A stretch of 64,000 nucleotides of DNA from Hyaloraphidium curvatum SAG 235-1. Taxonomy: Eukaryota; Fungi; Monoblepharomycota. Position 1 is the stretch's first letter. Each line of letters opens with the position of its first letter. The notes under the pieces are model-generated. The model was not told the DNA's origin, searched no databases, and saw only the letters and a program-made list of their open reading frames with translations. Location of the stretch: contig JAIVFI010000012.1 in assembly GCA_025558095.1 (NCBI GenBank), forward strand, positions 372,001-436,000. Reading direction: 5' to 3'. The position numbers and the translations under genes were made by a program. This document shows, in pieces, positions 42,142 to 63,656 of the stretch.

Positions 42142-45054
42142 ATGGAGGTCGTACTGGCCTCGCCGGGCGACGTCCCTGCAGCGCAGCGGCATGCGTTCGA
42201 CGCGTACCTCGAGTCGATGGCGAGCGGCGCGTGGGCGGCGACGATGGCGCTCGCGTGCCCCGCGTTCGCCGACCCGCGCGCCGGGCTGGCCGCGGCGCTC
42301 GCGCTGCCCGACGCCGAGGTGCTCGCGGCCGCGGCAAAGCACGGCGACATCGGCCAGCGGAACCGCGCCGCGCTCGACGCGCTGGCAAAGAGCGAGCAGG
42401 CAAAGGTCGCGCGCGAGGGCCCGACCGTCGACGCGCTGATCGCGGAGGGCGCCGCGTACCGCGTCAAGTTCGGCGTCAAGTTCCTCGTGTCGGCGCAGGG
42501 CAAGACCGCAGAGGAGCTGCTGGCCATCCTGCGCTCGCGGGCGGGCAATTCGCGCGAGGAGGAGTGGCGGAACGCCCGCGTCGCGCTGTGGGAGATCGCA
42601 GCCAAGCGGCTGCAGCTGCCCGGCGGGCCCCTGGCGTACCCCGAGGGCTTCGCGGCCCCGTGGGAGCTCCCCGAGAAGCACGGCGTCGAGGCCCTGTCGG
42701 CCGCGGTCTCGCTCCCCGGCGGCGGCGCGCAGCGCATCGCGGGCGCCTGGACGTCCAAGCCGCTGAGCCCCGAGGCCGAGGCCCTGCTCGCCGGCGGGCC
42801 CGTGCTCTTTGAGATCGCGTCGCTGAGCAAGACGCTCGCCGTGGCCATGGCCCTGGATTACTTCCGCGCCAAGGGCATCCCGTCCGACACGCCCGCCAAC
42901 GAGCTCTTTGCGCAGACGGGCTCCAAGTTCCGCATCGTCAAGTCGCCCGAAGCCGCCGGCACCGACTGGAGCGCGGACGAGGTCACGCTCGCCCACCTGA
43001 CGGCGCACTGCGCCCTCAACATGCACTACGTCAACGGCGTGCCCGCGGACCGGCCCATGCCTCCGATCGAGGCCTTTCTGTACGGCAACGACGAGTACGG
43101 CTACGAGCCCGTGTCGGCCATCAACAGGCCCGGCACGACCTTCAAGTACTCGGGCGGCGGCTTCCTCGCCCTCGAGCACCTCCTCGAGGCGCACTCGGGC
43201 CAGAAGGCCGCCGACATGGGCGACGCCTTCCTGGCCTCACTGGGGCTGCGGGACACCACCTTCCGCCAGGAATCCCTGCCCGGGCGCACCTACGCCCTCG
43301 GTCGGCGCGACGACGGGACCGTGGTGCACGGCGGCAGGCTCATGTTCCCCTCGTTCGCGGCCGGCATGATGAGCACCCCCGCCGACGTCATCGCCTTCCT
43401 CGCCAAGCTCGCCGAAGCCTACAAGGAGGTCGACCCGGCCAAGGCGGGCAACCCGATCTCGCACGACGCGGCGCGGTGGATGCTCCACGGGACCGACATC
43501 GGCAGCCGCCGCTTCATGGGCTGCCTCATGGGCCTCGGCGTGTTCGTCGCCGAGGCCGGGCCCAACAAGTTTGCCGTGCACCAGGGCGCCAACGACGGCT
43601 TCCGCGCCGTGTTCCTCTACTGCTTCGAGGGGCCCGACGCCGGGTTCGGGGTGGTCGCGTGCGCCAACGCGGACCAGCGCGCCGTGGGGCTGATTTCGGA
43701 GCTGCTCCAGGGCCTGCTGGTCAAGTGCGGCGTGCGCGGGGTGGACCGCGCGGCGTTCAGGTCGAGCTTCAGCGCCGACGGGGTGCGGCAGGAGGAGATC
43801 GTCAACACGGGCTACCGCGAGCTCGTCTTCCGCGCCTTCGAGCCCGCCAAGCCCGAGCCGATCGCCCGGCCGTCCGGGGCCGCGGAGCACCCTGCCCGCG
43901 CGGCGGACGTGCTACGCGGGTGCGAGGGGATGTACTGCTCCAACGATCGCTTCGGGCGGTGGGAGAACCTCGTCTGCGGGTTCGAGCCGGCCTTCGACCC
44001 CGCTCTGTTTGGGGCGCAGGGCAAGGTGATGGACAGCTGGGAGACTGTGCGGCACAACCCGCACCCGTGCGACGCGCTCACGCTGCGCCTGCGGGAGCCG
44101 TCCAGGTTGCGGTACGTCGAGGTGTCGACGCGGTTCCACCTGGGGAACCAGGCGCCCGAGATCAGGATCCTGGGGTTCGCCGACGCCGCGTTCGCGGAGG
44201 CGCAGGGCACGCTGCCGTCGGTCGCGTGCTCCCTGGGCATGCCCGAGGGCGCGATCGAGGTTCTGCCCAGGTTCCCGCTCGAGGGGCACAGCCTCGTGCG
44301 CATCGATCTCGGCGCCGAGGCCGCCGAGCGCAATGGCCCGCTGGCGGCGCTGACGATCCAGAACATCCCCGACGGGGGCATCACGCGCGTCGCCCTGTTC
44401 GCGCCCGACTTTGATCCGTCGGCGCTGGCGGCGGACGGACATCCGTTCGAGCCCGTGGCCGGCGCGCGGTGCAGGCGCCACGCGGAAGCCATCCCCAAGA
44501 CGCAGAAGCCCCTCGCCGCACCGCCGTCGGTTTCGCCCGAGGAAGCTGCCCGCAACAGGCTTGCCGCGCGCTCCGCCGGGCCGCCGTGGAACGCCGCCGA
44601 CGCGCTGCTCGGCGCTGCAGTGATCGCAGCAACTGACGAGCACTACAGCCCGGCTGCGCTGATCATCTCCCCCGGTCCGCCGCTCGACATGTTCGACGGG
44701 CTGGAGTCGGCGCGCAGCCGCCGCGCGGGGAGCTCGGAATCGGCGACGGTGCGGCTCGCCTGGCCGTGCGAGATCGAGGCGGTCGACGTCGACTTTACAT
44801 ACTTCCGCAACAACAACCCCAAGGAGCTGGGTATCGAGTACCTTTCTGAGGTCGGGAACGGGAACGGCGAGCCGGCCTGGAAGACGCTCGTCCCGTGCAC
44901 GCCCGTGAAGCCATTTGCCGGATCCGTCAAGAGGTTCGCCTTCGGCGCAGATCGGCGCGCGGCACTGGGGCCTGCTGCCGTGCTCCGCATATCGGCGTAC
45001 CCGTGCGGCGGGTTCAACAGGGTCCGCGTGTGGACGCACACCCCGCTGCCGTAG
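42142..45054 (+). CDS. Triple fusion: OHCU decarboxylase / beta-lactamase-like serine hydrolase / allantoicase (970 aa, intronless)
   Basis: OHCU decarboxylase: HGDIG..SEQ..YRVKFGVKFLVSAQG..EIAAKRL (~42142-42620). Serine hydrolase: FEIASLSK (SxxK, 42820), FKYSGGG (43147), HQGANDGF (43579). Two allantoicase repeats: CSNDRFG, GKVMDSWETVRH, FHLGNQ, PDGGITRV; TDEHYS, MFDGLESARSR, YFRNNNP, YPCGGFNRVRV. Confidence 0.88.
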   Translation: MEVVLASPGDVPAAQRHAFDAYLESMASGAWAATMALACPAFADPRAGLAAALALPDAEVLAAAAKHGDIGQRNRAALDALAKSEQAKVAREGPTVDALIAEGAAYRVKFGVKFLVSAQGKTAEELLAILRSRAGNSREEEWRNARVALWEIAAKRLQLPGGPLAYPEGFAAPWELPEKHGVEALSAAVSLPGGGAQRIAGAWTSKPLSPEAEALLAGGPVLFEIASLSKTLAVAMALDYFRAKGIPSDTPANELFAQTGSKFRIVKSPEAAGTDWSADEVTLAHLTAHCALNMHYVNGVPADRPMPPIEAFLYGNDEYGYEPVSAINRPGTTFKYSGGGFLALEHLLEAHSGQKAADMGDAFLASLGLRDTTFRQESLPGRTYALGRRDDGTVVHGGRLMFPSFAAGMMSTPADVIAFLAKLAEAYKEVDPAKAGNPISHDAARWMLHGTDIGSRRFMGCLMGLGVFVAEAGPNKFAVHQGANDGFRAVFLYCFEGPDAGFGVVACANADQRAVGLISELLQGLLVKCGVRGVDRAAFRSSFSADGVRQEEIVNTGYRELVFRAFEPAKPEPIARPSGAAEHPARAADVLRGCEGMYCSNDRFGRWENLVCGFEPAFDPALFGAQGKVMDSWETVRHNPHPCDALTLRLREPSRLRYVEVSTRFHLGNQAPEIRILGFADAAFAEAQGTLPSVACSLGMPEGAIEVLPRFPLEGHSLVRIDLGAEAAERNGPLAALTIQNIPDGGITRVALFAPDFDPSALAADGHPFEPVAGARCRRHAEAIPKTQKPLAAPPSVSPEEAARNRLAARSAGPPWNAADALLGAAVIAATDEHYSPAALIISPGPPLDMFDGLESARSRRAGSSESATVRLAWPCEIEAVDVDFTYFRNNNPKELGIEYLSEVGNGNGEPAWKTLVPCTPVKPFAGSVKRFAFGADRRAALGPAAVLRISAYPCGGFNRVRVWTHTPLP

Positions 45055-45734
45055 GGGGATCGGAAGTAATGACTGGTGGGATGGGTTGGATGGATGGATC
45101 AACCTCCCGGAAAAACGGTGAAACCCGGGATCGGGCTGATGATGATGATGGTGGACGGGGGATCGCCGGAAGAAAAACCGGATTCGGAGCAACTAGACAG
45201 ATGCAATCGATCGAATCATGCAGGCATGCCGAACATCCGCGCACAGCGTCTATCTGGAGAACGTGCGGTGCCCTTGCCGAAGTGGCGCGCTCGCTGGCGT
45301 TGCGCTTTTCACGTGGGCGAGCACACCAGGAAGGTAGCGTGCGCCCAGAGAACCTGGCTTTCGACAATCAGTCTTGACTCTGCATCAGTAATATCCGCCC
45401 AGAGTTCTTCATCCGATTCGCATGTGACCGACGGATTGTCAAGCTCTCGATCTCAAGGTCCCCCCGGACCCCGCGCAACGGCCACCTGCCCCACGCCACA
45501 CCGGCCATGCGTCCTGGGCCCGGGAATTAAACAGCGAGAGCGTTCCATAGAGGCCATCCGCGTCTTGTGGCCACGACACCCGCCGAACAGGGCATCGGGG
45601 CGGTCGGGTTCGGGCGGTCGGACTCCGTTCGTTATCTGGCCAGTCAGCGGGCCGATATCCAACATTCCGGTTTCTCTCGCACCTCTGCTACTCCCCTACC
45701 GCGCCTCGTGGAACCCCATCCGCACGAGTCGGCA

Positions 45735-48346
45735 ATGTCCGAGACCAACGGCGTCAACGGCGCCACGAACGGCACGGCGCCGGTCGTTTCCGACGTGAGT
45801 GTGGCCGTTTCAGGCCCTGGCCCTTCAGGCACCCCGGTGCAGACGCCCCGCGGGACGGAATCTGACGGGCGGCGCCTCATTCAGGCCGCCGTGAGCGAGA
45901 AGACCGCCACCGAGTTGGCGGACGTGCCCCTGAACGGCAAGGCCGCCACCACCGATCTCTCCACGATGGAGGCCGCTGCCCCCGTGGCCGAGCCCCCGAA
46001 GGGCGGAATGGCGGGCTTCTTCCACAAGTCGAACGAGGCCGGTGGGTTTCTTGACGTGCTCCGATGCTGCGGCGCGCTCATCGCTGCGCTGCCAGTCGCC
46101 AAGAGCTTCGTTGGCAAGTTCTTCAAGGTAATCAACAACCCCCGGGAATCCCCCGCCCCGATGCTGACGCGGCCCTCTAGCTCGATGAGCGCAAGACCAC
46201 CTTCTGGACCGAGCTTCGTGCCGGGCTCACGACCTTCGTCACGATGAGGTGCGCTTTCCGTTGACGCGAGTCCCCCCGCTTATCTCACACCCCGCGCACC
46301 GACAGCTACATCATCGCCGTCAACGCCGCCATCGTGTCGGACACAGGCGGCCCCTGCGAGTGCCCTGCCGACCTGTTCCCTTGCTTCCCCGGCAAGGACG
46401 TCGCCTACGATCAATGCGTGTTCGAGCTTCGCAAGAGTTTGATCACGGCCACGACGGCCGGCTCGCTCATCGGTTGCTTCCTCATGGGAGCCTTTGCCAA
46501 CCTGCCTATCGCTCTCGCCCCCGGCATGGGTCTCAACGCCTACTGTGAGCTGGTCCCTGCGCAGATCGCCCGCCAGGATGCTGACAACTTCGAAAGTCGC
46601 CTACACCGTTGTCGGCTTCCGCGGCACCGGATCGGTTCCTTTCGAGGTTGCGCTTGCCGCCGTCTTCATCGAAGGCGTCATCTTCGCCATTCTCTCGATC
46701 CTCGGTCTCCGCCAGGCCCTCGCTAGGTTCCTGCCCCAGACCCTGAAGCTCGCCATGGGTGTCGGCATCGGCTTTTTCCTCGCCCATATCGGCGGTCAGA
46801 CGTCGGAGGGCATCGGCCTCATCACCTACAACCAGGCGACCCTCGTGACCCTCGGCGGTTGCCCGCTGGACGACCGCAACGAGCGCAACGAGTGTCTCGC
46901 GAACGTGATGCGTGGCCCGACCACCTGGGGTGGGTGGCCTGCAAGTTGTCGTTCTGTGCTTCGAATCTAACGTCGATCGCGCTCCCCGATAGTCGGCATT
47001 ATGGGGTTCTTCTTGATCGCCATCCTCATGCTGTACCGCGTCCGCGGTGGCATCTTCATGATCGTCTTGTTCGTCTCGATCATCTCGTGGCGTGAGTGTC
47101 TGTGCCGTGCCTTGGTCAGACTTTCTTTTGATCCGATCGGTCCCCTCTCCGCGCTCCCCCTCCCACCTGCGAATCGCGCACAGCCCGTGGCACTCTCATC
47201 ACCTACTTCCCTTACACCCCGCTTGGCGACGCCAAGTTCGACTGTACGTGTCCTGTTTGTCACCTGCTGTTGCGCCAGTACTCACTCGTTTCGCGTTCAG
47301 ACTTTAAGCAGGTCGTTGCGGTCCCCAACGCTTCCATGACAGCAGGCAAGCTCAACTTTGACCTGTCGGGCGGCGCCGTCTGGCTTGCGCTCATCACCTT
47401 CCTTTGTGCGTCTTCGGGAGTCTTGCAGTACACCACGAATCTAATGCCTCGCTTCGGCAGACGTCGACATTTTCGACGCCACCGGTACCCTGTACTCCAT
47501 GGCCAACTTCGGCGGCTTCACCGACAAGTACGGCGACTTCCCGGGTGCCGAGTTTGCTTTCCTCGCCGATGCCGTCGCCATCTCGATCGGTGCCGTGCTC
47601 GGCACGTCCCCCGTCACCGCCTTCATCGAGTCGGCGGCCGGCATCGCCGAAGGAGGCCGTACCGGTCTCACGGCCATCACGGTGTCGTTCTTCTTCTTCA
47701 TCGCCCTGTTCTTCGCCCCCATTTTTGCCTCGATCCCGCCGTGGGCCACGGGTCCGGCCCTCATCGTCGTCGGTTGCCTGATGGCCCAGGGTGTCTCGAA
47801 GATCAACTGGTGAGCACGGGAAACAGCGTCAGACAATCGGCAGCTGAAGCTCACTGCTTTACACTTTCCAGGCGCTACTACGGCGATGCCATCCCCGCGT
47901 TCGCTACCATTGCTCTGATGCCCCTCACCTACGTGAGTGAAGGATTTGGGCGGATGTAGCTGCTTCTAACGAGTGCTCTGGCTGGCAGTCGATCGGCTAC
48001 GGCATCATCGGCGGCATCTTCGTCTACCTCGTCCTGAACGGCGGCGTCTGGCTCCTTGCCAAGGTGTCGGGCGGCAAGATCGTGCCGCCGGACCACGACA
48101 AGAGGGAGAAGTACAACGCCTACAACGAGCTCCCGATCCTCCCCAAGTGGATTCGGTCCCTCTACTCCAAGGCGACGAAGAAGCCTATGTGGGAGGACAC
48201 GCCCAAAGGGCAGGAAGTACGTTCGGAAGCAGCAGGGACGAAGTGTCGGATCCTCACGCCACGCGATCTCGCAGGTCCTTGCCCGTTACGATGCCATCCC
48301 GCGCTCCGTCCTGGAGGCCGAGATCGAGGAGGCAAAGCACTTCTAA
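45735..48346 (+). CDS. azgA: AzgA-type purine (adenine/guanine/hypoxanthine) permease
   Basis: [95 protein letters not shown]; about 10 introns. Confidence 0.92.
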
Positions 48347-48581: not shown

Positions 48582-50501
48582 ATGGACATACACGCGCCTC
48601 CGGACCCGCCTACGGTCGAAGTCATCGACTCTCTTGCCGATGAGGAGGAGCCAAACACGCCCGAGGCCGATGAGACCGCGCCGATTCTTGCCCCGGCGCG
48701 CACTCGTCGCAGCACCGTTCACTCGCTCGACGACCGCTTCACCGACGGATGGCTCTCCGCGAGCACCAAGCGCGGCATTGCGGAAACTGCGGAGCTTTCT
48801 GCGCCGGTGATCCTGGGAAATCTGGCCAAGTCGTGCGTGCAGCGCGAGATGCGTGGCCGGGTCCCCCGTTTGACATTGTCTCCTCCCCGCAGCCTGACGA
48901 ACCTCTACGTCATGCTCCGATTCCCATCGCAGCGCGTTCTCGGCACGCAGTCTCTGGCGTCGGCGGTTCTCGCGAACTTCTACATCCAGGTCTTCGGGAA
49001 CGCGACCGCGATCGGTGGCGCATCTGCTCTGGAAACGCTCTGCTCGCAGGCGTTTGGGGCCGGCCATCTGTCGTTGCTCGGCGTCTATTTGCAGCGCGGC
49101 ATCCTCTTCTACATCCTGTTCCTCTTCGGTACGATGGACGATGGCGCTTGTGCTAGGGTGAAAACTGACTCTCGGCACCAGTGCCCGTCGCTGCGCTGTT
49201 CTGGTTCGCGGAGCCCGTCTTCCTGGCGCTCGGACAGCAGCCCGACTTGGCCCGTGGAGCCGCTCAGATCTGCAGGGGCGCGATTTGGGGCATGATTCCG
49301 AACGGCATGATAGAGTGCTTCCAGCACTACCTTCTTTCGCAGGGTGAGCCCCCCTTCGAAGACTTCGCTGAATCGAGTTAATCGCCGAGAATGACTGTCG
49401 CTCCGCAGGCAAGGTCTGGGCTCCGGTCGCCATCTTTTGGGTCGGCTTCATCGTCGCCCTCACGGTCGGCGGCCCTCTCATCACCGGCAAAGTGGAAGCT
49501 GACGGCGGCGTGCACGTCGATGCGTACGACCTCACTGCTGTCGGTTGGACCATCAGCGCCGTCTGGTGAGGCTGCTTCGACCGCCTCAACGTGCCCTTCC
49601 TTATCGCCGCCTCGATATCTCAGCACATCCTACGCTCTCATGGCCATCCTGTTCTCGCTCGTCTTCACGCGCAAATCCGGTGCCTTCACCGGGTTCCAAC
49701 CCAAGGAGGCGCTTGCCCCGAAGGAGCTGTGGCACTACATCAAGCTCGCCGTCTACGGCTACCTCATGCTCGTCGCGGACCTCATCGTGTTCGAGGGCCT
49801 TTCGGTCCTCAGCGGCTTGATCGGCGAGCGCGAGCTTGCATCGCAAGGAATTCTCCTCAGCATGACGTCGCTCATCTGTACGTTGCTGCCCGCTGCAGTC
49901 GCCTTTCTGCGAGCTTACCAAACCCGCGTCAGACTTTACCTTCCCGGTCTGCGTTGCATTCGTCGCCGCGGTCCGCGTGGGCCGTGCGCTGGGCGCCAAC
50001 AAGTATCGCGCCGCCAAGAAGGGCTACATCTCTGCGATCGGCCTCGGCATGGTCGGCGCGATCGCCATATCTTCGACGATGGTCGGGCTCCGCTTCGAGC
50101 TGCCGCTCTTCTTTTCCGACGATGCCAAGGTCATCGAGCAAGTCTCGGCCGTGCTGCCCCTGGTGGCCGTCATTTCCGCGATCGACAACAGCGCCATCAT
50201 CTCGACCGGCGTGCTGCGCGGCATGGGCAAGCAGTACTTCTCGGCCATCACCAACATCGGAGGCCTCGTCCTTTGCGGTCTCGGCTCGGCGTGCATCATG
50301 GTCCTGGTCCTCAACTACAAGCTCTGGGGAATCTGGATCGGCCTGCTGATCGGCACCGTCATCGTCACCGGGTCCCAGGTGGGCTACCTCAGCCTCGTCG
50401 TGGACTGGAAGGCGGAGGCGCAGGCCGTGGTGGACAGGTTCAAGGCGCGGAACGAAGAGGGCAATTCCTCGGGGGAACCGGTGGAACCGGCCGCTCACTA
50501 G
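48582..50501 (+). CDS. MATE-family efflux transporter
   Basis: LGTQSLASAVLA, GGASALETLCSQAFGA, LGVYLQRG, VRVGRALGA, GVLRGMGKQ, WGIWIGL; multi-exon. Confidence 0.92.
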
Positions 50502-50693: not shown

Positions 50694-51209
50694 ATGAAAC
50701 TGCAGGCGGAGCCTCTCAACGCGGATTCCTTCGCGCCCTTCGGCAGCGTCGTCGATGCCGCGGCGCTCAAAGGCTGGCCCGTGAACCAGGGCCGGGCGCG
50801 CCGCGCCAACATCCCCAGCCCTTTCGAGGCGCCGGACGGAGCCATCGCGCCGCGCCTAGCGATCTACGAGGTCCAGGGGACCCCGTCGCCGATCGAGATC
50901 CCCGTGCTGGAGCGGCACCCCTTATCGCCCCAGATGTTCGTGCCCCACGGGACTGGGCGATACCTCGTCGTGGTGGCCCCGACGGACGACGAGGACAAGC
51001 CGGACGTCGCACACGCACGCGCGTTTGTGGGGAAGGACGGGCTCGCGGTGGTGTACAGCAAAGGAACCTGGCACGCACCCATGTTCGCGCTGGACCAAAG
51101 ACTGGACTTTATGATGGCCATGTCGGAGGCTGGGGACCAGCGAGACACGGAGGAAGTATCGCTGGCGGTGCCGCTGGAGGTCATTGCTCCTGATGTGTCG
51201 CACCGATGA
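50694..51209 (+). CDS. Ureidoglycolate lyase (AllA/DAL3 family), intronless
   Basis: AEPLNADSFAPFG, VNQGRA, LERHPLSPQMFVP, YLVVVAP, YSKGTWHAP. Confidence 0.92.
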   Translation: MKLQAEPLNADSFAPFGSVVDAAALKGWPVNQGRARRANIPSPFEAPDGAIAPRLAIYEVQGTPSPIEIPVLERHPLSPQMFVPHGTGRYLVVVAPTDDEDKPDVAHARAFVGKDGLAVVYSKGTWHAPMFALDQRLDFMMAMSEAGDQRDTEEVSLAVPLEVIAPDVSHR

Positions 51210-51499: not shown

Positions 51500-53350
51500 T
51501 CAGGAGCTTTGTGCGCCCGAGACCATCCGGCCGCGCACGTACACCTGGCGGATGGCGCTGATGTCGCCGAGGTAGACCCACTTCTCGATGATCGAGGCCA
51601 TGGTGTCGTGCGGGAAGATGTCCACCGGGTTCTCCGGGTTCTCCAGGTCGATCACGAGCGCATCGAACTCCTTCCCGACCTCGAAGTTGCCCACGACGTT
51701 CTCGAGCCCGAGCACCTTGGCGCCCCCGACGGTGGCAAAGTAGAGCACCTGCGCGAGGTTGAGCGCCGGCTGGCGGTGGCGGTGCTCCGTCGGCGTCGTG
51801 CTGAGCGACGGCATGCTGAGGATCTTGCCCGCCGTCATGGCGTCGCGCACCGTGTTCTGCAGCGAGGGGCTGTACCCGCCCGAGACGTCCGTGCCGAGGC
51901 CGATCTTGTCCGTGAAGCCCTCGCGCTTGCCGGGGGGCGGCGTGCACATGTAGTGCCGCACGTTGCAGATGCCGGAGCCGAGGGCAAAGTTGGAGGTCGG
52001 GCAGTGCGAGAGGCCGACGTCGCGGCGCACCATCATCTCCCGCTCGTCGTCCGAGAGGTAGATCCCGTGCGCCATGATCGACGTGGGGCCCAGCAGACCG
52101 TACTTGTCGTACACCTCGACGTAGTTGTGCTCGTGCGGGTGCAGCTTGTGCACCCAACCGACCTCGGCGGGGTTCTCGCACGTGTGCGACTGGATCGGCA
52201 CGGAAAACTCCTTGGCGATCTGGCCGAGGCCCGAGAGCAGCTCGTCCGTGCATGTGGGCACGAACCGCGGCGTCACGACGGGGCGGATGAGGCCGACCTT
52301 GTGCGGGTCGTCGGCGACGCCCTCCGAGGTCACGTGCAGGACGTGCTGCACAAAGTCGCGGGTATCGCTCAGCGACGACCCAGTGTCCTCGACGTAGTAG
52401 TCGGGCCCATTGCGGTCCATGCAGACCTTGCCCACGAGGCCGCGCTGGCCCTGCCGGAGCATCTCGTCGGCCAGGACCTTGGAGCCCTCGAGGTGGATGG
52501 TCGCGTAGTAGCTGGCGGCGGTGGTCCCGCACCGCAGGGTCTTGGCGACCGCTTTGCGGTACGCCATCCGCGCGTACTCGACGTCCTTGAACGCCGCCTC
52601 CCGCGGGAAGGTGTAGGTGTTGAGCCACTCGAGGAGCGGCAGGTCGAGGCCGGTGCCGGCAAAGACGTACTGCGAGGCGTGGATGTGCGTGTCGATGAAG
52701 CCGGGGAAGATGAAGGTCGAGGGGGTGGTCGTGGCCGTGACCTGTGCGGCGCGCAGCGATGCGACGGAGGAGGAGAGGGGAGGTCAGGGTCGCACGAGGA
52801 GTGCGCAGCAGTTCGCACGCACCTTCTGGATCTGCAGGTCGACCCCTTGCATGTGCGGCACGGCCTCTTGGATCTCCTTTGCGAGGATGTCTGCGGGCGG
52901 GAGCACGAAGCCGCCAGCGGCCTCGACGGCCATGCGCACGCAGCCCAGCTCGGGGGTCACGAAGCGGATGACTCCGGCGGGGTCGACGCCGAGCGCGGCG
53001 GCGGGGCCCAGCATCTCGATCACGGGCAGGAAGACCTGCGAGTCCTTCGGCAGCCGACAGTGCACTATGTTGCCCACGAACAGGTGGATCCCCGTTCCGT
53101 CGGAAGTTGAACTGGCCGCCCCGCGAAGCACAAAGGTGCGGACCCCGGAGGCGCGGGCGGGTGCGGCGGCGGCGGAGTACGGCGGCGGCGACTCGACATC
53201 CGCCCGCGCGACGACGACCTCGAGCAGCGGGGCGGGCTTGTCGTCGGTGGGGCGGGACGCGTCGCACCGGCGGGCCCTCAGCAGCCGCGCGAGGAACAGC
53301 AGCGCCGCGACGGCCACGGCCGCGAGCTGCGCGAGCAGAACAAAGTCCAT
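51500..53350 (-). CDS. Guanine deaminase with N-terminal hydrophobic extension
   Basis: PGFIDTHIHASQY, LLEWLNTYTFP, GTTAASYYATIH, TPRFVPTCT, IQSHTCEN, MAHG, HCPTSN, GLGTDVSGG, GNFEVGKEFDA; intron near 52744-52822. Confidence 0.93.
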
Positions 53351-53652: not shown

Positions 53653-55155
53653 ATGGCGCCGCAGCAGCCGCGGTTCGCCATCGTGGGGGGCGGTCTCGGC
53701 GGCCTGGTGCTCGCGCTGGCCATCAAGAAGCACCTGGGCGTCACGCCGACGGTGTACGAGCAGGCGCCGAGCTTCGGTGGGCACCGCGCGATTCGCGCCC
53801 CGGACGCGCCCTGAGCCGCTCTCGCCCCGCAGATGCCGGCGTCGGAGGCGCCATCGGCATGTACGCCAACGGGCTGCGCGTCATCCGCGACATCTCGCCC
53901 GAACTGCTCGACCGCATCCGCGCAGACAGCAGGCCGTACGTGCACCGCAGGTGGATGCGCCACGACGGCTCAGAGGTCGCCGTGGGCGAGGAGCGCTACC
54001 TGGCGGAGTGGCCCACGCGCCGCGACGAGCTCGAGCTCGCGTCCATCGGCATCAGGCGGTGGCGCCTCCAGCAGGCCCTCTACGACGCCTGCCTGGCCGC
54101 GGACATCCCCGTCAAGCTCGGAGTTCGCGCCGAGCTGGACGGGCAGGATGCGGAAACGGGCGTGGTGCGCCTCAAGGTCGACGGGAAGACCGTCGAGGCC
54201 GATCTCGTGTTTGGGTGCGACGGCGTCCGGTCGGCGATCCGTGCGGCCCTGTTCCCCGCGTCGGAGCCCGACTACACGGGGGTGACGTGCCTCATGGGTG
54301 CGGCACCCTTCCGGCGTGAGAAGGACGGCATCTGCTTCCCGTCCTCGGCAACGACTCGGTGGGGGAGCACCTTATCTCCTGCGCCGCGCGTCACGCTAAT
54401 TCCTCATGCTGCTGGCTCGGCAGCAATCATGCTTGCTACTACAACACAGGGGACAACGAGCAGGTTTTCCAGATCTACTTCAGCACCCCCGAGCGGCCGG
54501 AGACGTGGCGGGCGCTCAGCAAGGAGGAGGGCAAGAAGGAGTGCGAGGCGCTCGCTGCGCAGCTCAAGTGGGCCCCCCTCTTGTCCGACGCCTGCGAAGC
54601 TAATCCTCACCGTGCCCCAGAGCCGACGGCTGGGACAAGCAGTTCGTCGACCCGCTCCTCCAGGCCGAATCCGTCCTCCGCGTCGGCCTGCGCTCCCGCA
54701 AGCCGATCCCCGTCTGGCACGACCGCCGCGTGATCCTCCTCGGCGACGCGGCCCACCCGCCCGTGCCGTACATCGGCCAGGGCGCCATGATGGCGATCGA
54801 GGACGCCGGCGTGCTGGTGTTCTGCCTGCGCGCGCTGTGCCAGCCCGCCTCGGGCGGTGCCTTCTCGTTCGCGCAGCTGGAGGACGCGGTGCGGCTGTAC
54901 GAGAAGCTGCGGTACCCGCGCACGGCCGAGACGCTCGCGAGGAGCGAGTCGCTGGGGAAAATGCAGGTGCAACGCGCCTCGGATCCCGACAGGGCCGAGG
55001 TGGAGAAGCGCGAGCGGGCACTGGCGGAGGAGGTGGCGGAGCTGGGGACGCTCAGGGTGATGAAGGCCGGGCCCGGCTACGACTACCGCGCGGAGGTCGC
55101 TAATGCGCTGGCGGAACACGTGCGCGGACGGGTGCTCGCGGAGGCACATCTCTGA
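53653..55155 (+). CDS. Group A FAD-dependent monooxygenase, candidate HpxO-like urate hydroxylase
   Basis: IVGGGLGGL (GxGxxG), [15 protein letters not shown] (DG motif), [24 protein letters not shown] (GD motif); three introns; ends in -AHL (PTS1-like). Substrate inferred from context only. Confidence 0.85.
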
Positions 55156-55188
55156 TAGAAGGCTTGGAGAGACACAGCATGACACCAG

Positions 55189-57887
55189 CTAGCATGTACA
55201 CGGAATCGAAGGCGACGCTTCCACGATCGTGACGGGATCTCCAACGTTCAACATCCCCTCTCCCTTGCCCGAACTCCTGCTCAAGTCCTCGCGCCACATC
55301 AGGTGCGCACCAAATGTGATCTTGCCCTTCGCATTCTTCCGTTTGCGGGATAGGGTGCTGTAGGGCTCCGTCGTCTTGGTGCCGGTATCCTTTCAGAGAA
55401 CGACTCAGCATCGAGTCGATGGCAGAGCAAGGGAAAGACGCACCTGGTTGATGCTGACCATCAAGCACCTCCGGCAAGCGCCCAGCACCTGGAACACTTG
55501 GTCGCCTATCCGGAAGAGGTCCACGTCGTCCTCGAAGAACGGCGGCACGCCGTCGGAGTCCGCAAGTTCCAGGTTGGCACGGAAGCAGGCCGAGGGTATC
55601 GCGGCATGCGTCGTATCGGCCGCGATCCACTCGTTGACTTTGCGCGTGGATGACGAGCTGATTAGAAGGAACGGAGACTCGTTCGACAGGAGGAGTGGCA
55701 AGGGCGGCCCGTCGAAATGGGCATGTCGGCTCGATCCCGAGGACGGTTCGGCGATGTAGCGCTGGAGCTCGCAGGGCGTGCCGAGGAAAGAAGTGAACCA
55801 CTCGTCCGCGGCGGCGCTCACGTGCGCGACGGGTACGGTGTCACCACATACGCGGGCTTCAGAGGATGCGTCGAACGACGTGGGCCGTGGAAGCGGCAGA
55901 ACTAGGTCCGGCATCCCAGGCGCGGTGACTCGCAGGATCCCGGCGACGAGGTCCACGCTCGGCCTGATAAGGACCATCCTTGGCCACCGCTTTTGCGAGA
56001 GCGATATCTCCGTGCGCGGATCTACGACCATCCATTCGCGGTCGAAAGCCAGGCCGGTGGAACCGATGGTCCAGGATGAAACAGTCTGGCCAGCGCACGA
56101 CTTGATGGGATCTGCAGGACGGTCTGCTTCAGCCCGGCTGCCAATGAGCTTTGCGGTCGACAATGACTCACAGAGGGTCAGCTTATCCAGCCAAAGAGAC
56201 TGAGTCCGCAAGGAAACAGGGGTGCTTGTCAAGGAGACAGCCGCTTCCGACTCGGTATAGAAACGGCGAACAAACTCAACGAAGGCGAGCGCATCTGCGA
56301 GCGTAGAGCTGGCACCGAACGAGATACGTGCGATTCCTAGCGGACGGGCTTGCTCGTCGAACTCGTCTAGAAAGACGTGTAACAGTCAAGAACGACCCCT
56401 TGCCAATCGACGACCACTTCAGCTCACCATCGTCCCAACACGACAGCTGCTTATCGCGCATGCGTACGAGATCTTCGTCGTCGAACCCCGCTGCCGATAT
56501 CCACGCGCCCGTGTTGCAGAGACGTCCGGTACGCAGCTGAAATCCATTAATCGTGGCCAGTCGGTCGAATTGCACATGTCCGCTGTGAGCCCCCCGTGAA
56601 TCGAGCAGCGAGAAACCAATGGTCGCCCCGGGTTGCTCCAAATAATAGCCCATATGGCGTCGGAAAACCGGCGAGCCGTTCGCGTGCCTCAGTGCGCCGA
56701 GCGCATCCGCTACAAAGGATGCGAGGCTGGTGGCGTGCGCAGACACCAGTGAATGCGATCCATAGAGAGCGCGGTGCGTGTCAAGTGCGTGTCCGAGCCC
56801 AACGATATCCAGGAAAGGCAGCGTGCCAGCCTCCAAACGCTCATGCACGGTCGGCTTGTATCCAGCTCCCCGCCTCCGCGTCACCCAGAACGGCGACCCT
56901 GTCGAAAATCCTTCCACGGTGCCGCCTCCGAAGTACGCGTCGTTGGAAAGCAGATGGCCGGACGCGCGCTTCACGACGAGGGCACCGAGCCCCGTCGGCC
57001 AACCCTAAATGGGATAGGTTAACTTCATCGCCACGGCGGCGACGCTTGCACTCATCAACTCACGAAGAGCTTGTAGAACGACATGGCGATGAAGTCGGGA
57101 GCCAGACGCGACTCCAAGGCTCCGAGGTTCAGCACATTCGTCGAAAGGTAGGCGGCGGCATCGACCAAGACAGCCGTCTTTGGTGAACGCTGCTTGATCT
57201 TCCGACAAAGTTCCAAGCCCAAACGTGCGCCCGTAGCGTTGCACTGCGCCGGATAGGCGGCCAGGCACAGCACATCGGGTTCGTCCGACCATCCGCCAAG
57301 CATCTCGGCCTCCTCGAGGGCCTGAACGTCCACTCCGTTGGCCAGAGCGAGACCCCGAATGCCCACGAGACTGGTGTGCGAGTTCTTCAGGTATCGCAAA
57401 CGCGTGCGTCCTTCCCGACGCCAGGGAAAGGCATCCCCGACGAGCTTCAGCGAGGATGTTGCGCCGGACGTGAAGACCACGTCCCATTCCTTGGCCCGCT
57501 CCGATTCGAGGCCGAAAAGCTCAACAAGCACCCGTGTTCGGACGCGGTCGATGGCCAGGCTGGTGGCGACCGCGGCCGTCGACCGGGAGTGGGGGTTCGA
57601 GTAGAGGGTCGAGGACATGTCCGAAAGGAAGGCCTGTACGGCAGCCGGCGGCGCAGGAGGCGACGCCGCATAGTCCAGATAGACCGTGTCTGTCGTTCCG
57701 ACATGCGGGGCAGGGGCAGGGCATTGCCAGGCGTCAGCTTGAGCGACAGGGACGGTGCGCGGGATGCACCTTGCAAGGCCGGGAACTCCCTCTCCCGCCG
57801 CCTCTCGAACTCGTCGGCATCGCCGTACCCATAGCCTGCATCTTGCAGCTTCCGCCGCAGCTCGGCGATTGGATCGTCCGCGGTCAT
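55189..57887 (-). CDS. hxB: Molybdenum cofactor sulfurase (HxB/MOCOS/ABA3)
   Basis: YLDYAAS, LYSNPHS, VVFTSGAT, SFYKLF (PLP Lys), GGGTV, EAGTLPFLDI, LRTGRLCNTG; C-terminal MOSC domain PIKSC, DREWMVV, FRANL, CRRCLMV. Confidence 0.92.
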
Positions 57888-58069: not shown

Positions 58070-61000
58070 ATGGAGGGGACGCAGTTTTCCAGCGTGCTCC
58101 GGTTCTACTTGAACGGCCAACGCGTGGTTCTGGACGGCGACTCTGTCGACCCGGACACGACGCTTCTCACCTATCTTCGCGGAATCGGCCTGACGGGGAC
58201 GAAGCTGGGATGCGGGGAAGGCGGCTGCGGGGCATGCACGGGTAGGATTGACCGATGACTCGTCCTAGTCGCGGCAAATGCTCACGAGACGGCGTCGGAT
58301 CAGTCGTGCTGCAAAGCCGGAACCCCGCGACGGGAAAGATAGAGTGGGTACCTACCTCGCTCGATCTTCGACGCAACTAACGCTCATTGATTCAGGCACC
58401 GCGCAATCAATGCCTGCCTGGCTCCCCTCGTGTCCGGTACGACGAAGTTCGGTCTCTTCGCTATCTCGTCCTCATCGACCCCTGTTTCCTTCAGTTGACG
58501 GCCGACATGTCATCACCATTGAAGGTAATTGCCGCTGGCCAACGATCCAAGCGAACTCGCGTGCTGAACGGTCCGCCAGCCCTGGGCAACTCCGAGAACC
58601 CTCACCCGCTCCAGGAGCGCATGTGGAAGCTCTCGGGCTCACAGTGCGGCTTCTGCACCCCCGGTATCGTGATGAACGTTTACGCCCTTCTCCGTGAGGC
58701 CGCCTACCGCGGGGCGCTCACCGTCGAGGACATAGAGCTGGAGGGCGCGCTGGACGGCAACCTGTGCCGCTGGTGGGTCGAGCGACGTATCCGGCACCGC
58801 GTCGAATTAATTCCCTCTTTTCAGCACCGGCTACGCTCCCATCTTCGCAGCCGTGAAGAGCTTCGTGGGATCTTACTTGTCCAAGGTCTCGCCGACGGCA
58901 AACGGCGACAGTGGGCGGGACGCCGAAGTCGAACTGCCGTTCAACTACGAAGCTGCGGGTCTGCTGTCCGAAAAGCCGGCAGCCGCTCAGTGTTGCACCC
59001 ACGACCAGCCAGTCAACGGAGCCCATGAATCTGCCCCGGCTGCCGGGAAAGGCTGTGGCCGATCGGACTGCTGTCAGCTCAATGGCGGGTTAAACGGCAC
59101 GGCGGAAAGCGCGGCACCCAAGCGCGCGTTTCCTCTCTTCGAGTTCAAGCCTTATCGACCTGGCACCGAGTTGATCTTCCCGCCTGCTTTGATGACGCAC
59201 AAGCTGGAGCCGCTCAAATTCGGTTCCAAATCTCGCCTATGGTACCGGCCGACGACTTTGGACCAGCTATTGGCCCTCAAGAAGGCTTTTCCGGACGCCA
59301 AGCTGGTTGGCGGCAGCTCGGAGATTGCCATCGAGGTCGGCATCTTGGGCCGAAAGTACCCGACGTGCATCTTCGTCGGCGATGTTCCGGAACTCCAGAG
59401 CGTGTCACCTGTGGTGTCCGGCTCGGACTCTCCGAACCTCACGTTCGGGGCGAATCTTCCCCTTTCCGACCTCGAGGAGCTTTGCAAGACGCTGTCGAAG
59501 GAGCTGCCTTCTAACCAGTCTGGGCCGGTGAAAGCCATTCGCGATCAGCTTCGGTAGGAGGCTGTGTGCTAGCCGATTGCTCTTCCTGACCACGGTCATG
59601 CAGGTACTTTGCGGGGCGCCAAGTGCGCAACGCCGCTTCCGTGGGCGGCAACATCGCTACGGCGTCGCCGATCTCGGACTTGAACCCGGTCTGGATCGCC
59701 ACCGGAGCCAAAGTGGTCGCAGCCAGTGCGGCGCAGGGCGAGTTTGAGCTCCCGGTCGATACCTTCTTCGTTGGCTACCGCAAGACCCAGCTGCCTTCGG
59801 ATGCGGTCATCGTCCGCGTTGTCGTACCGCTCAATGGCTCCCCGGAGCGTGAATACGTGCGAGCTTTCAAGCAGGCCAAGCGCAAAGATGACGATATCTC
59901 CATTGTGTGTTCCTGCATGTTCTTGAGGCTCGGTTCCGACAACGCGATTACGGCGGTTCGACTGGCTTTCGGCGGCATGGCGGCGATCACGGTGCAGGCC
60001 CCAAAGACGGAGGCGTTCCTGCTCGGTGAGATCGATGCGATGTCGTCCAAAGCTCGTGCTGACCGCCAGAAAAGGCAAACCGCTGACGTCCGAAACGGTC
60101 GAGGGCGCCATTGACGTTCTCAGCGGCGAGTTTGATCTGCCCCACGACGTTCCTGGAGGTGAGCAAACCGTTTCGATTGTCACGGCGGGTCTTGATTCCT
60201 CGGGCACAGGCATGGCATCGTATCGCCGCACTTTGGCGATGTCTTTCCTCTTCAGATTCTTTGCCTCTGCTGCAGAACAGTTCGGCATTCAGTTCGGATC
60301 CATGGGTGCCAATGTCGACGGCGATCTCACGGATTCGATCCACCGCAACATCAGCTCTTCGAGCCGCGATAACTCGGACCCGTATGCTCTTGCGACGTTG
60401 GGCCAGCAAATTCCTCACAGCTCGGGCTTAAAGCACGTCACCGGAGAGGGTAGGTTGCGTCGGCGTAGCAGGTTCACACTCCCCACCTAATGCTTCCGCA
60501 CAGCTGTCTACGTCGACGACATGCCGACGGTCGGCAACGAGGCATACTTGGCACTTGTTTTGTCGGACCGCGCTCACGCGAAGATTGTTTCGGTCGACCC
60601 CTCAGCTGCACTCGCGGAGGACGGCGTCATTTCTTACGTTGATCACCGGGACCTTGCTAGCCCAAAGGCAAACATCTGGGGGCCATCCGCCACGGCCATG
60701 GACGAGACCTTCTTCGCAGTCGACGAGGTCATCGCCCACGGGCAGATCATTGGCGCAATCGTCGCCAAGACGAAGATCATTGCCGTCAAAGCTGCGAGGC
60801 TGGTGAAGGTCCAGTACGAGGACTTGCCGTATATCTTGACGATCGAGGAGGTTCGGCAGTGTTGTCGGCGCGTGGCGTTCGCCAGTCTAAACGCAGATTA
60901 CTTCCGCCAGGCGATCGAGGCTCGGTCTTTCTTCCCCCAGTATGATCGCCGCATCGCGCGAGGCGACGAGATCGAGGAAGCCCTCGCGCGGTGCGACCAC

Positions 61001-63071
61001 GTCGTGGAGGGCTCGACACGTACAGGTGGCCAAGAGCACTTCTATCTGGAGACGAACGCGTGCCTCGTGGTACCTAAGCTGGAAGGCGGAGAGATGGAGG
61101 TCTTTTCCTCGACCCAGGCCCTGAATGACACACAAAAGTGGGTCGCACAGGTCACTGGCGTTCCGCGAAATCGCATCGTTGCGCGCGGGAAGCGTTTGGG
61201 AGGCGGCTTTGGCGGCAAAGAAAGCAGGACTGCAATGCTGGCGGCTGTCTGCGCTGTTGCGGCCAAGAAGCTGCGGCGACCGATCAGGTCAATGATGGAC
61301 CGCGACGTCGACATCCGGACCACGGGGCAGCGGCATCCTGTTCTTGCGGAGTGGAAGGTCGGGTTCACGAAAGAAGGGAAGCTGCAGGCGCTGCAGTGCA
61401 CGTGAGTCTCTGCACTTTAGCCAGTACTTCTCTGTGATGTGACGCAAAACCCTGCCAGAACCTACGTGAATGGTGGTTACTCAATTGACCTCTCCATCGG
61501 TGTCTGCGATCGGGCCCTCGCCCATCTGGACAACACGTACTACATCCCGCACTTTGACGCGCGAGGCAAGATATGCCGAACAAACACCGTCAGCAACACT
61601 GCATTCCGCGGGTTCGGCGGACCGCAGGGGATGTTCATCGCCGAGTCTTACATCGAGAAGATTGCGCACACGCTCAAGATGGACGTCGACCGCGTGCGCG
61701 AGATAAACCTGTATACCGAAGGACAGCGCACGCCGTTCCACCAGCAGGTGCTCGACTGGCATATCCCGCGCATGATCAAGGAATGCGCTGCCGAAAGCGA
61801 CTACGTGCGCCGCAAAGCCGAGGTGGCCGCGTTCAACAAGACGCACCGTTGGCGAAAGCGGGGGATCTGTCTTGTGCCGACCAAGTTCGGCCTTGCATTC
61901 GGCATCAAGTTTCTGAACCAGGCCGGTGCTCTCGTGCACATCTATACGGACGGATCGGTGCTCGTCGCTCACGGAGGAACAGAGAGTGAGGCTCCGGGAT
62001 CTTGGCTTCGCCGATCGGCGGCTGATCCTTCCTTCTGCCGCTGTTGTCAGTGGGTCAAGGACTGTACACCAAGTGCACCCAGATTGCCGCGCAAGAGCTC
62101 GGAGTGCCGCACGACTCGGTGTTTACCTCCGAATCTTCTACCAACACCGTTCCGAACACCGTTCCGACGGCTGCTTCGGCAGGCAGCGATTTGAATGGCT
62201 ATGCGGTGAGCATTGGTCCGTCGTGGTGTCGCGCTCGTCCTAATGTGGTTTTAGGTTTACAATGCGTGCAAAGAGTTGAATGAGCGCCTCAAGCCTTATC
62301 GTGAGAAGCTCGGACCGGACGCATCAATGGCTGCCCTCGCCTCTGCGGCTTTCATGGACCGCGTCAACCTGTCGGCGACCGGATTCTGGGGCCCGCCCGA
62401 GCTCGGATACGTCTGGCGCAGCTACGACGAAGGCGGGGGACGCGACGACGAGGGCAAGGTTGGTCCCCTGTTCATGTACTTCACTCAGGGCGTGGCGGCC
62501 AGTGAAGTCGAGGTGGACATCCTTACTGGAGACCACACGGTGCTCCGAACGGACATCAAGATGGATGTTGGAAAGAGCCTGAACCCAGCCATCGATTACG
62601 GGCAAATCGAAGGGGCGTTCGTGCAAGGGATGGGGTGGTCGACGATCGAAGAGTCTCTGTGGCTCAAGAACGGAGCCATCTTCACTGCCGGACCTGGAAC
62701 CTACAAGATCCCCGGTTTCGCGGACACGCCGCAACAGTTCCACGTGCGTTTGCTCAAGGGAGTCGAATGGCCGAACCTCAAGTCCATTCGCTCATCGAAA
62801 GGCATCGGAGTGGGTGCGGCCGCCGTACGAGCTGCGTTTCCCCGACTGACGTTGGCGATAGGAACCTCCGCTGTTCCTGGGGTGCTCCGTCGCGATCGCC
62901 ATCCGCGACGCCCTTCGATCGGCGCGCGCCGATGCCGGGATCGACGACGTCCAGGACTTCCGCCTTCCGCTCACTTCTGAGCGGATTCGGCTCGCGGCGG
63001 GCGACTTTTTGGCGCAGAAGGGCAAGGTGGAGGCGAAGGAGGGCCAGAAGGGTTGGTTCGTTCCGTTTTGA
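58070..63071 (+). CDS. hxA: Xanthine dehydrogenase
   Basis: [93 protein letters not shown] after splicing; more than 10 introns. Confidence 0.97.
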
Positions 63072-63257
63072 GCGGCTCGCACGCGGTCTGGAGGAGAGCT
63101 GTAGTAGCTGATTGAATGATCTGTCGCATTGCTGGACGGAATTGAAGATAGAAGGAAGAGGAACAGGGCCTCGGGAGTCATTTGCGCTTCAGCGTGCGTG
63201 GATGACGGGGTGTCCTGTCATCTTGTCACGCACCACTGCGGCAATCTTCCCTGAATC

Positions 63258-63656
63258 ATGGCGTCTCGCGCCAAGCTGAGCACTCATGTTCTTGACACGA
63301 CCCATGGCATTCCGGCTGCGAACATGCGGGTAGATTTGTACTCCGTGTCGACCTCGCAGGACGGATCGCGTTCCCTGAACCACGTCAAGACTGTGCGGAC
63401 AAACTCGGACGGTCGCAACGACGGAGGCCCGCTCCTGTCCGCGGAGGAGCTGCGCGTTGGCGAATTCGAGCTGCATTTCCACGTGGCGGAGTACTTTAGC
63501 GCTTATCGCGCGGCGCACGGGGAACCGGCACCCTCCGCTGGGGTCTCGTTCCTGAACATCGTACCTATCGCTTTCGGAATCCCGGACGCTTCGCAAGGGT
63601 ATCACGTGCCATTGCTGTGTTCGGAATGGTCCTACTCGACCTACCGCGGAAGCTAG
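63258..63656 (+). CDS. uraH: 5-hydroxyisourate hydrolase (transthyretin-like), intronless
   Basis: [26 protein letters not shown], terminal YSTYRGS signature. Confidence 0.96.

What the first reader, a model, noticed from the sequence alone, without database searches (positions are those of the whole stretch)
42142..63656. Contiguous, operon-like complete purine-catabolism gene cluster in a eukaryote
Seen: nine adjacent genes over 21.5 kb with no clearly unrelated gene between them. They map onto uptake (AzgA), guanine to xanthine (guanine deaminase), xanthine to urate (XDH plus its activating Moco sulfurase), urate to HIU (FAD monooxygenase candidate), HIU to OHCU (UraH), OHCU to ureidoglycolate (fusion) and ureidoglycolate to glyoxylate + urea (lyase), plus a MATE. 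Established: in Aspergillus nidulans these genes are scattered, and the S. cerevisiae DAL cluster covers only the allantoin part. Inference: a whole-pathway cluster of this kind is unusual and may be undescribed.
Basis: partly seen in the sequence, partly recalled or inferred. Interest (0 to 1): 0.88.

Follow-up and report, generated by a model that had tools for sequence, protein, structure and literature searches.

The report
Fungal purine cluster, candidate new allantoinase
An early-diverging aquatic fungus keeps almost its whole purine-breakdown pathway in one block of nine genes gathered from bacterial, basidiomycete and native sources, and one enzyme part looks like a previously unrecognised third kind of allantoinase.

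Summary
Nine adjacent genes on contig C12 of Hyaloraphidium curvatum (Monoblepharidomycetes) lie between an LRR gene and P5CR; seven are securely purine-catabolic, including the genome's only allantoicase and HIUase. Four genes are shown spliced in a probable RNA run. It is a cluster, not an operon: strands are mixed, no shared promoter motif was found, and co-regulation is untested. 'Complete' rests on two inferred steps. (1) The beta-lactamase-fold domain of the UraD-allantoicase fusion is probably a new allantoinase class (about 70%). Of 56 allantoicase-bearing genomes among 251 Bdellovibrionota-phylum genomes, 31 have only this domain, 24 only AllB, one both, none neither, none PuuE; the two operon types otherwise match. 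The fungus does have a PuuE-like gene elsewhere. (2) The FAD monooxygenase is not HpxO, but no uricase, HpxO or PuuD was found in the genome, so it may be a recruited urate hydroxylase (about 55%). The cluster is a mosaic: a fusion of bacterial ancestry, a basidiomycete-derived Moco sulfurase paired with XDH (AU p=0.001), and a chytrid-native monooxygenase unclustered in three other chytrids. No paper describing it was found. Earlier scan notes concern this same DNA only.

The parts
42142..45054 (+). Intronless 970-aa fusion: OHCU decarboxylase (aa 17-158), beta-lactamase-fold serine hydrolase (aa ~178-562), two allantoicase repeats (aa 596-965). Only allantoicase in the genome.
   Evidence: Pfam; single copy; homologues are bacterial 1550-aa malate-synthase-like/UraD/serine hydrolase/allantoicase fusions at 40-45%
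42673..43827 (+). Serine hydrolase domain, candidate third class of allantoinase; S227-x-x-K230, Y336 and H480-Q-G invariant in 120 of 120 homologues
   Evidence: conservation; model pLDDT 94.6, serine beta-lactamase/D-amidase fold; mutual exclusion with AllB
45735..48346 (+). AzgA-family purine permease, intron-rich
   Evidence: Pfam Xan_ur_permease; AZG1 E 3e-37
48582..50501 (+). MATE transporter; role in the pathway unknown
   Evidence: Pfam MatE; 3' part on its own contig of the probable RNA run
50694..51209 (+). Ureidoglycolate lyase, intronless; the only full-length copy found
   Evidence: PF04115 E 1e-38; RNA
51500..53350 (-). Guanine deaminase; one intron (about 52742-52822); exon 1 has a hydrophobic N-terminal extension
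   Evidence: TIGR02967 above cut-off; intron in RNA
53653..55155 (+). Flavin monooxygenase (442 aa, 3 introns, C-terminal AHL, PTS1-like); candidate non-HpxO urate hydroxylase
55189..57887 (-). Molybdenum cofactor sulfurase (HxB/ABA3 type), basidiomycete-derived; head-to-head with XDH
   Evidence: Pfam; RNA introns; homologue span; trees and AU test
58070..63071 (+). Xanthine dehydrogenase, intron-rich; motifs carrying the substrate glutamate, substrate arginine and catalytic glutamate are present
   Evidence: motifs and sequence; the two other family members in the genome are divergent
63258..63656 (+). 5-hydroxyisourate hydrolase (UraH), intronless, single copy
   Evidence: TIGR02962 above cut-off

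Best explanation
A eukaryotic primary-metabolism gene cluster for using purines as a nitrogen source, assembled within this lineage from genes of at least three origins. Route: AzgA imports purine bases; guanine deaminase gives xanthine; XDH, activated by the neighbouring Moco sulfurase, gives urate (family-level assignments, shown). The peroxisome-targeted FAD monooxygenase hydroxylates urate to HIU in place of the missing uricase (inferred, about 55%). HIUase and the UraD domain give (S)-allantoin (family-level, shown). The beta-lactamase-fold domain opens the allantoin ring through a Ser227 acyl-enzyme with Lys230/Tyr336 as general base, giving allantoate (inferred, about 70%). The allantoicase repeats give ureidoglycolate + urea, and the lyase gives glyoxylate + urea (family-level, shown). 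The genes are separate transcription units, not an operon.
For: Gene identities. Sole copies of allantoicase, HIUase and full-length lyase. No uricase, PuuD, HpxO or AllB found in the genome. Allantoinase inference: of 251 Bdellovibrionota-phylum genomes, 56 have allantoicase; 31 have only the serine hydrolase domain, 24 only AllB, 1 both, 0 neither, and none has PuuE (Fisher p 6e-15). The two states interleave on a RecA tree (at least 7 changes; 7 of 7 independent pairs concordant, sign test p about 0.016). The two operon types share PuuD, HIUase, UraD, allantoicase and a malate-synthase-fold gene or domain, and differ by AllB versus the serine hydrolase, each directly before allantoicase. 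The lyase is missing from most genomes of both types, so the domain is not a lyase substitute. The ten sub-threshold AllB hits checked are dihydroorotases or dihydropyrimidinases. Catalytic motifs are invariant and the fold is that of amide/lactam hydrolases. Origins: the sulfurase nests in Basidiomycota (100/99) and grouping with the chytrid Blyttiomyces is rejected, AU p 0.001; the XDH-sulfurase head-to-head pair recurs in seven metagenome loci; the monooxygenase's nearest relatives are chytrid and are unclustered in three genomes.
Against: No enzyme assay or induction data. H. curvatum has an unlinked PuuE-type gene with the Glu/His/Trp triad (E 3e-89 to P. fluorescens PuuE, though 344 bits is under the 425 cut-off), so it does not need a new allantoinase. 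The bacterial operons probably travel as blocks, so the exclusion compares two operon designs rather than many independent events. The monooxygenase is closer to tropone, 3-hydroxybenzoate and 6-hydroxynicotinate hydroxylases than to HpxO, has His where HpxO-like proteins have Arg, and has homologues in diatoms. The MATE has no assigned role. No shared promoter motif. Absence calls rest on an exon-by-exon six-frame search of one assembly and on incomplete MAGs.
Confidence: 0.72

Rival explanations
1. The cluster is a real purine cluster, but the serine hydrolase domain is not an allantoinase. The unlinked PuuE does that step in the fungus; in bacteria the divergent allantoicase repeats or an unrecognised protein do it, and the domain is an amidase for a side product or another ureide.
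For: PuuE-type gene on C19. The fused allantoicase repeats score far lower than free allantoicases (about 60-110 vs 140-190 bits), so their specificity may have shifted. One genome (G240) has both systems, with the domain beside an aminotransferase-like gene.
Against: No PuuE or AllB in any of 31 genomes with only this domain (34 checked for AllB); no other gene family is shared by the 30 loci except PuuD, HIUase and sporadic XDH/GDA; the domain sits exactly between the preceding and following enzymes; its fold is that of amide and lactam hydrolases.
Confidence: 0.22
2. The FAD monooxygenase is unrelated to urate: an aromatic or pyridine hydroxylase (for example acting after XDH on 6-hydroxynicotinate, like A. 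nidulans HxnX) or a bystander, so the urate step lies outside the cluster.
For: Fails the HpxO model (103 of 500 bits); nearest structures TrlE, VibMO1, 3HB6H, NicC, with HpxO at rank 26; His-x3-Tyr in the substrate strand; orthologues unclustered in other chytrids; other flavin monooxygenases in the genome score higher on the HpxO model (157 bits).
Against: No uricase, PuuD or true HpxO found although both flanking steps are present; it sits mid-cluster, head-to-head with guanine deaminase; 9 of the 20 closest family members end in a PTS1-like tripeptide, and fungal uricases are typically peroxisomal (own knowledge); no other hxn-type genes in the cluster; Hondaea independently places a near-canonical HpxO beside its fusion.
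Confidence: 0.4
3. The whole block came in one transfer of a bacterial purine operon and is still operon-like.
For: Oligoflexus has a cluster of similar content: PuuD, HIUase, fusion, XdhCBA, permease, guanine deaminase.
Against: XDH, sulfurase, AzgA and MATE are intron-rich eukaryotic genes; XDH exons match basidiomycete-like loci at about 55-85% and Oligoflexus at 34-49%; the sulfurase nests in Basidiomycota; the monooxygenase is chytrid-native; mixed strands.
Confidence: 0.03
4. Misassembly or contamination joined unrelated fragments.
For: The fusion is intronless and bacterial-like; GC varies from 0.59 to 0.72 across the block.
Against: 786-kb contig of a 55-contig assembly; one spliced contig from a public run spans four genes at 99%+ identity with no differences; that run holds 0.68 of the words of 44000-50000, about the exonic share; fusion GC3 0.94 resembles native neighbours; these are the genome's only copies.
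Confidence: 0.02

Closest known systems
S. cerevisiae DAL cluster (DAL1-4, DAL7, DCG1; Wong and Wolfe 2005, via PMC13751858)
   Same: Eukaryotic nitrogen-catabolism cluster with allantoicase, ureidoglycolate lyase and a permease; apparently assembled by relocation.
   Different: DAL covers allantoin onward only and uses a metal-dependent allantoinase; this block starts at guanine/hypoxanthine, has XDH, its sulfurase and HIUase, lacks DAL1, and includes horizontally acquired genes.
A. nidulans hxn nicotinate clusters (PMC5746545, PMC8478523)
   Same: Fungal catabolic cluster built around an XDH-family enzyme with a flavin monooxygenase and transporters.
   Different: Different pathway; hxB (sulfurase) is unlinked there; no HxnR-like regulator or other hxn genes here; the XDH lacks the FATAL signature of HxnS.
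Bdellovibrionota/Oligoflexus purine operon with the malate-synthase-like/UraD/serine hydrolase/allantoicase fusion (annotated only as 'serine hydrolase', 'allantoicase' or 'malate synthase')
   Same: Same three domains in the same order, 40-45% identity, also beside HIUase and often XDH and guanine deaminase.
   Different: The fungal protein lacks the N-terminal malate-synthase-like domain; the urate oxidase is PuuD in the bacteria and absent here; the fungal block adds a lyase; other members are eukaryotic in origin.
Known allantoinases: AllB/DAL1 (amidohydrolase) and PuuE (polysaccharide deacetylase fold; Ramazzina 2008, cited in PMC8092297)
   Same: Proposed same reaction; identified by the same logic of genomic replacement as PuuE.
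   Different: Unrelated fold: SxxK serine beta-lactamase/D-amidase family, implying a covalent acyl-enzyme.
HpxO FAD-dependent urate hydroxylase (K. pneumoniae, PDB 3rp6-8)
   Same: Group A flavin monooxygenase fold; proposed same step.
   Different: 20% identity, 103 vs 500-bit cut-off, His in place of the Arg of HpxO-like proteins; eukaryote-only family with PTS1.

Membership tests
Eukaryotic metabolic gene cluster (DAL/hxn type) | Three or more non-homologous genes of one pathway physically adjacent | tested here: met
   Seven securely assigned pathway genes among nine consecutive genes
Eukaryotic metabolic gene cluster (DAL/hxn type) | Co-regulation by substrate or nitrogen status | not testable with these tools
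   Only contigs of one probable RNA run; motif search negative
Operon | Co-directional genes on one polycistronic transcript | tested here: not met
   Two genes on the minus strand split the block into divergent and convergent pairs; introns spliced on both strands; MATE lies on a separate contig
Complete purine-to-glyoxylate pathway | A known-family urate oxidase (uricase, HpxO, PuuD) in the cluster | tested here: not met
   None found in cluster or genome; HpyO not tested
Complete purine-to-glyoxylate pathway | A known-family allantoinase (AllB/DAL1, PuuE) in the cluster | tested here: not met
   AllB not found in genome; PuuE-type gene on contig C19 only
Serine beta-lactamase / D-amidase superfamily (PF00144) | SxxK, Tyr motif and KTG-equivalent motif on the alpha/beta penicillin-recognising fold | tested here: met
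   S227-x-x-K230, Y336, H480-Q-G invariant; Pfam above cut-off; model matches IS11 esterase, D-amino-acid amidase, LACTB at TM 0.6-0.7
Allantoinase (EC 3.5.2.5) as a function | Hydrolyses allantoin to allantoate | not testable with these tools
   Needs an assay
Allantoinase (EC 3.5.2.5) as a function | Genomic replacement: present where known allantoinases are absent, next to allantoicase | tested here: met
   31/24/1/0 split among 56 genomes; 7 of 7 independent pairs
HpxO urate hydroxylase | NCBIfam NF033623 score at least 500 and the active-site Arg | tested here: not met
   103 bits; His at the aligned position
Guanine deaminase (TIGR02967) | Score above curated cut-off | tested here: met
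   392.8 vs 375.4
HIU hydrolase (TIGR02962) | Score above cut-off; C-terminal YRGS | tested here: met
   108 vs 87; YRGS
Xanthine dehydrogenase (HxA type, not HxnS) | Domain order, GGGFGGKE / AFRGFG / GEPP motifs, no FATAL insertion | tested here: met
   HxnS signature from PMC5746545. Gly replaces the usual Thr after the conserved Phe, untested for effect.

The most novel reading that the evidence does not exclude
The beta-lactamase-fold domain is a third, serine-dependent class of allantoinase, widespread but unrecognised in Bdellovibrionota and acquired at least twice by eukaryotes; with a recruited peroxisomal flavin monooxygenase as a new urate hydroxylase, it makes this block the first self-sufficient guanine-to-glyoxylate cluster in a eukaryote, built from bacterial, basidiomycete and native genes.
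Probability: 0.45. Interest if true: 0.88.

Novelty: new variant of a known kind. Interest (0 to 1): 0.78.

Why it matters
Fungal purine catabolism is the textbook example of an unclustered pathway (PMC5611559), and DAL covers only its tail. A near-whole-pathway block in an early-diverging fungus, pieced together by inter-kingdom and fungus-to-fungus transfer, is a clean case for testing how clusters are born. It also yields two directly testable enzyme predictions. The stronger one is a serine-hydrolase allantoinase: it would be a third unrelated solution to that reaction, fill the allantoinase gap in about 55% of allantoicase-bearing Bdellovibrionota genomes sampled, give a natural substrate to a branch of the beta-lactamase superfamily, and define a three-step allantoin-processing polypeptide.

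Tried and rejected
Shared promoter motif: CCGACTC occurs in 5 of 7 intergenic regions, but size-matched random segments share a 7-mer as often in 45% of trials and the window has 16 copies versus 18 expected; no UaY-type TCGG-N6-CCGA site. PuuE beside the Bdellovibrio fusion: it is a signal-peptide-bearing polysaccharide deacetylase, not PuuE. Serine hydrolase as ureidoglycolate lyase substitute: rejected, lyase is absent from most AllB-type genomes too. Hidden AllB in fusion genomes: ten top sub-threshold hits are dihydroorotases/dihydropyrimidinases. Replication in a second phylum failed for lack of cases: only the seed genome among 176 of G002's phylum has the domain. Conserved cluster elsewhere: not found around monooxygenase orthologues in three chytrids and one metagenome locus, around an HIUase relative, or around the best sulfurase hit; only the XDH-sulfurase pair recurs. 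ESM Atlas gave only generic names. Ten literature searches found no description of this cluster or of a beta-lactamase-fold allantoinase; subscription journals are not covered. Gonapodya, the closest sequenced relative, could not be searched; origins of AzgA, MATE, guanine deaminase and lyase were not determined.
Full report
Source and observation. The window is G000:C12:372001-436000 of a 31.9-Mb, 55-contig assembly; a protein it encodes is NCBI's DFJ74DRAFT_755984 of Hyaloraphidium curvatum, a monoblepharid fungus (classification from own knowledge). Between an LRR gene and pyrroline-5-carboxylate reductase lie nine genes: a 970-aa intronless fusion (OHCU decarboxylase, beta-lactamase-like, two allantoicase repeats), AzgA permease, MATE, ureidoglycolate lyase, guanine deaminase, FAD monooxygenase, Moco sulfurase, xanthine dehydrogenase and HIU hydrolase. 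Allantoicase and HIUase are single-copy in the genome and the lyase is the only full-length copy. Six single-copy pathway genes in one nine-gene run would arise by chance at about 1e-16. A probable RNA run gives one 6.7-kb contig over lyase, deaminase, monooxygenase and sulfurase, with six canonical introns on the expected strands and no sequence differences; it holds 0.68 of the words of 44000-50000, about the exonic share. A contig across genes does not show one transcript; overlapping ends explain it.

Not an operon; not demonstrably complete. Guanine deaminase and the sulfurase are on the minus strand, giving two head-to-head and two tail-to-tail pairs. No promoter motif beat the controls. 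No uricase, PuuD, HpxO or AllB/DAL1 was found in the genome. A PuuE-type gene with the Glu/His/Trp triad lies on contig C19 (E 3e-89 to P. fluorescens PuuE; 344 bits, under the 425 cut-off). So two steps inside the block have no known-family enzyme: urate to HIU, and allantoin to allantoate. Each has one unassigned candidate.

The serine hydrolase domain. Relatives of the fusion are 1550-aa bacterial proteins with an extra N-terminal malate-synthase-like domain, named in Oligoflexus, Bdellovibrio and Bacteriovoracaceae, plus the thraustochytrid Hondaea. S227-x-x-K230, Y336 and H480-Q-G are invariant in 120 of 120. The model (pLDDT 94.6) matches family VIII esterase, D-amino-acid amidase, LACTB and DD-peptidase folds at 16-20% identity. 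I tested what the domain replaces. In 251 genomes of the phylum of a Pseudobdellovibrio carrier, 56 have allantoicase, 32 the domain, 25 AllB and none PuuE; the overlap is one genome with two separate loci, and 32+25-1 = 56, so every allantoicase genome has one or the other (Fisher p 6e-15). The states interleave on a 50-genome RecA tree (at least 7 changes forced by well-supported branches; 7 of 7 independent pairs concordant, p about 0.016). The operons are PuuD-AllB-allantoicase-UraD-HIUase-DUF6986 versus PuuD-HIUase-[malate-synthase-like/UraD/serine hydrolase/allantoicase]; AllB is in none of 30 fusion loci. Lyase is absent from most genomes of both types, and the ten sub-threshold AllB hits checked are dihydroorotases or dihydropyrimidinases. 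The simplest reading is that the domain opens the allantoin ring through a serine acyl-enzyme, a third allantoinase class (inference, about 70%). Caveats: operons move as blocks, so this is in effect a comparison of two designs; many genomes are MAGs; the fused allantoicase repeats are divergent; the fungus has a PuuE-like alternative; a second phylum offered no replicate.

The monooxygenase. It belongs to a family found in chytrids, diatoms and unnamed metagenome sequences, scores 103 of 500 on the HpxO model, is nearer to tropone, 3-hydroxybenzoate and 6-hydroxynicotinate hydroxylases, and has His where a true HpxO-like protein has Arg. It is not HpxO. In favour of a urate role: its position, the absence of any urate oxidase, PTS1-like ends in 9 of the 20 closest members, and the parallel in Hondaea, where a near-canonical HpxO (469 bits) sits head-to-head with a separately acquired fusion. 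I put this at about 55%.

Origins. The sulfurase's nearest relatives are Microbotryum, Pseudohyphozyma, Rhodotorula and agarics at 54-62%; on a 209-residue exon it nests in Basidiomycota (100/99), and holding it with the chytrid Blyttiomyces is rejected (AU p 0.001; only one chytrid comparator was named). The head-to-head XDH-sulfurase pair recurs in seven metagenome loci whose XDH exons match at about 55-85%, so the pair probably arrived together (inference). The fusion forms a separate branch with a lake-metagenome protein and a EukProt transcript, outside the sampled bacteria, so its ancestry is bacterial but the immediate donor is unknown. The monooxygenase looks native, and its orthologues in Zopfochytrium, Gorgonomyces and Cladochytrium have unrelated neighbours. 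HIUase's best hits are an unnamed metagenomic group, then alphaproteobacterial proteins. GC3 is 0.73-0.78 in sulfurase, XDH and HIUase and 0.83-0.96 in the others, but native genes in the window span the same range, so composition alone proves nothing.

Comparison with what is known. In A. nidulans none of the 17 purine genes is clustered (PMC5611559). The DAL cluster covers allantoin onward; whole-pathway clusters are described for B. subtilis and K. pneumoniae (PMC13751858), a 2026 review that mentions neither 'lactamase' nor 'serine hydrolase'. The hxn clusters serve nicotinate, leave the sulfurase unlinked and were not found in early-diverging fungi (PMC5746545, PMC8478523). Ten searches found no account of this cluster or this enzyme; the library lacks most subscription journals. 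The scan's earlier notes lie on this same DNA and state the same two enzyme guesses; I had framed and tested both before reading them, and they are not independent support.

Verdict. A real, apparently undescribed, near-whole-pathway purine cluster: a new variant of a known kind. Its main value is the genomically supported prediction of a serine-dependent allantoinase, testable with one recombinant protein. Interest 0.78.

Noticed in passing
L111-L128 (AllB-type operons) versus L129-L148: AllB-type operons end in a DUF6986 gene where fusion-type operons carry a malate-synthase-like domain; both types mostly lack ureidoglycolate lyase, and the fungal fusion lost that domain while its cluster has a lyase. 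DUF6986 and the malate-synthase-like domain may handle ureidoglycolate or glyoxylate. No pairwise similarity by BLASTP.
   Followed up: partly
L011:7377-14776 (Hondaea fermentalgiana): A near-canonical HpxO (469 of 500 bits) head-to-head with an independently acquired four-domain fusion: a second eukaryotic purine mini-cluster.
   Followed up: partly
G000:C19:137640-138560 (L017:1486-2493): PuuE-type allantoinase gene with Glu/His/Trp triad and C-terminal ANL, unlinked to the cluster.
   Followed up: partly
L026, L027, L030, L031, L033-L035: XDH and Moco sulfurase are head-to-head in several basidiomycete-like metagenome contigs; no paper on this pairing was found.
   Followed up: partly
window 52823-53350 (-): Guanine deaminase exon 1 encodes a hydrophobic N-terminal extension, spliced in frame to the catalytic exon in the RNA contig.
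   Followed up: partly
window 14130-17687 and 27959-31057: Near-duplicated gene, about 14 kb apart; the 3' exon tested has no Pfam match. My notebook guess of DUF2961 was not confirmed.
   Followed up: partly
window 21332-24283 (-): 983-aa ORF with a C-terminal DEY..SK.C..C stretch reminiscent of TnpB/Fanzor nucleases (from memory); no Pfam match.
   Followed up: partly
window 17768-20734 and 31070-33755: Glycosyltransferase genes and a UDP-sugar dehydrogenase/epimerase gene, GC-rich and intron-poor; possible small polysaccharide cluster.
   Followed up: no
G000:C26:262404 and C6:454831; C3:267847 and C29:128440: Two divergent XDH/aldehyde-oxidase-family genes lacking the XDH substrate motifs, and two weaker sulfurase-like genes, elsewhere in the genome.
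   Followed up: no
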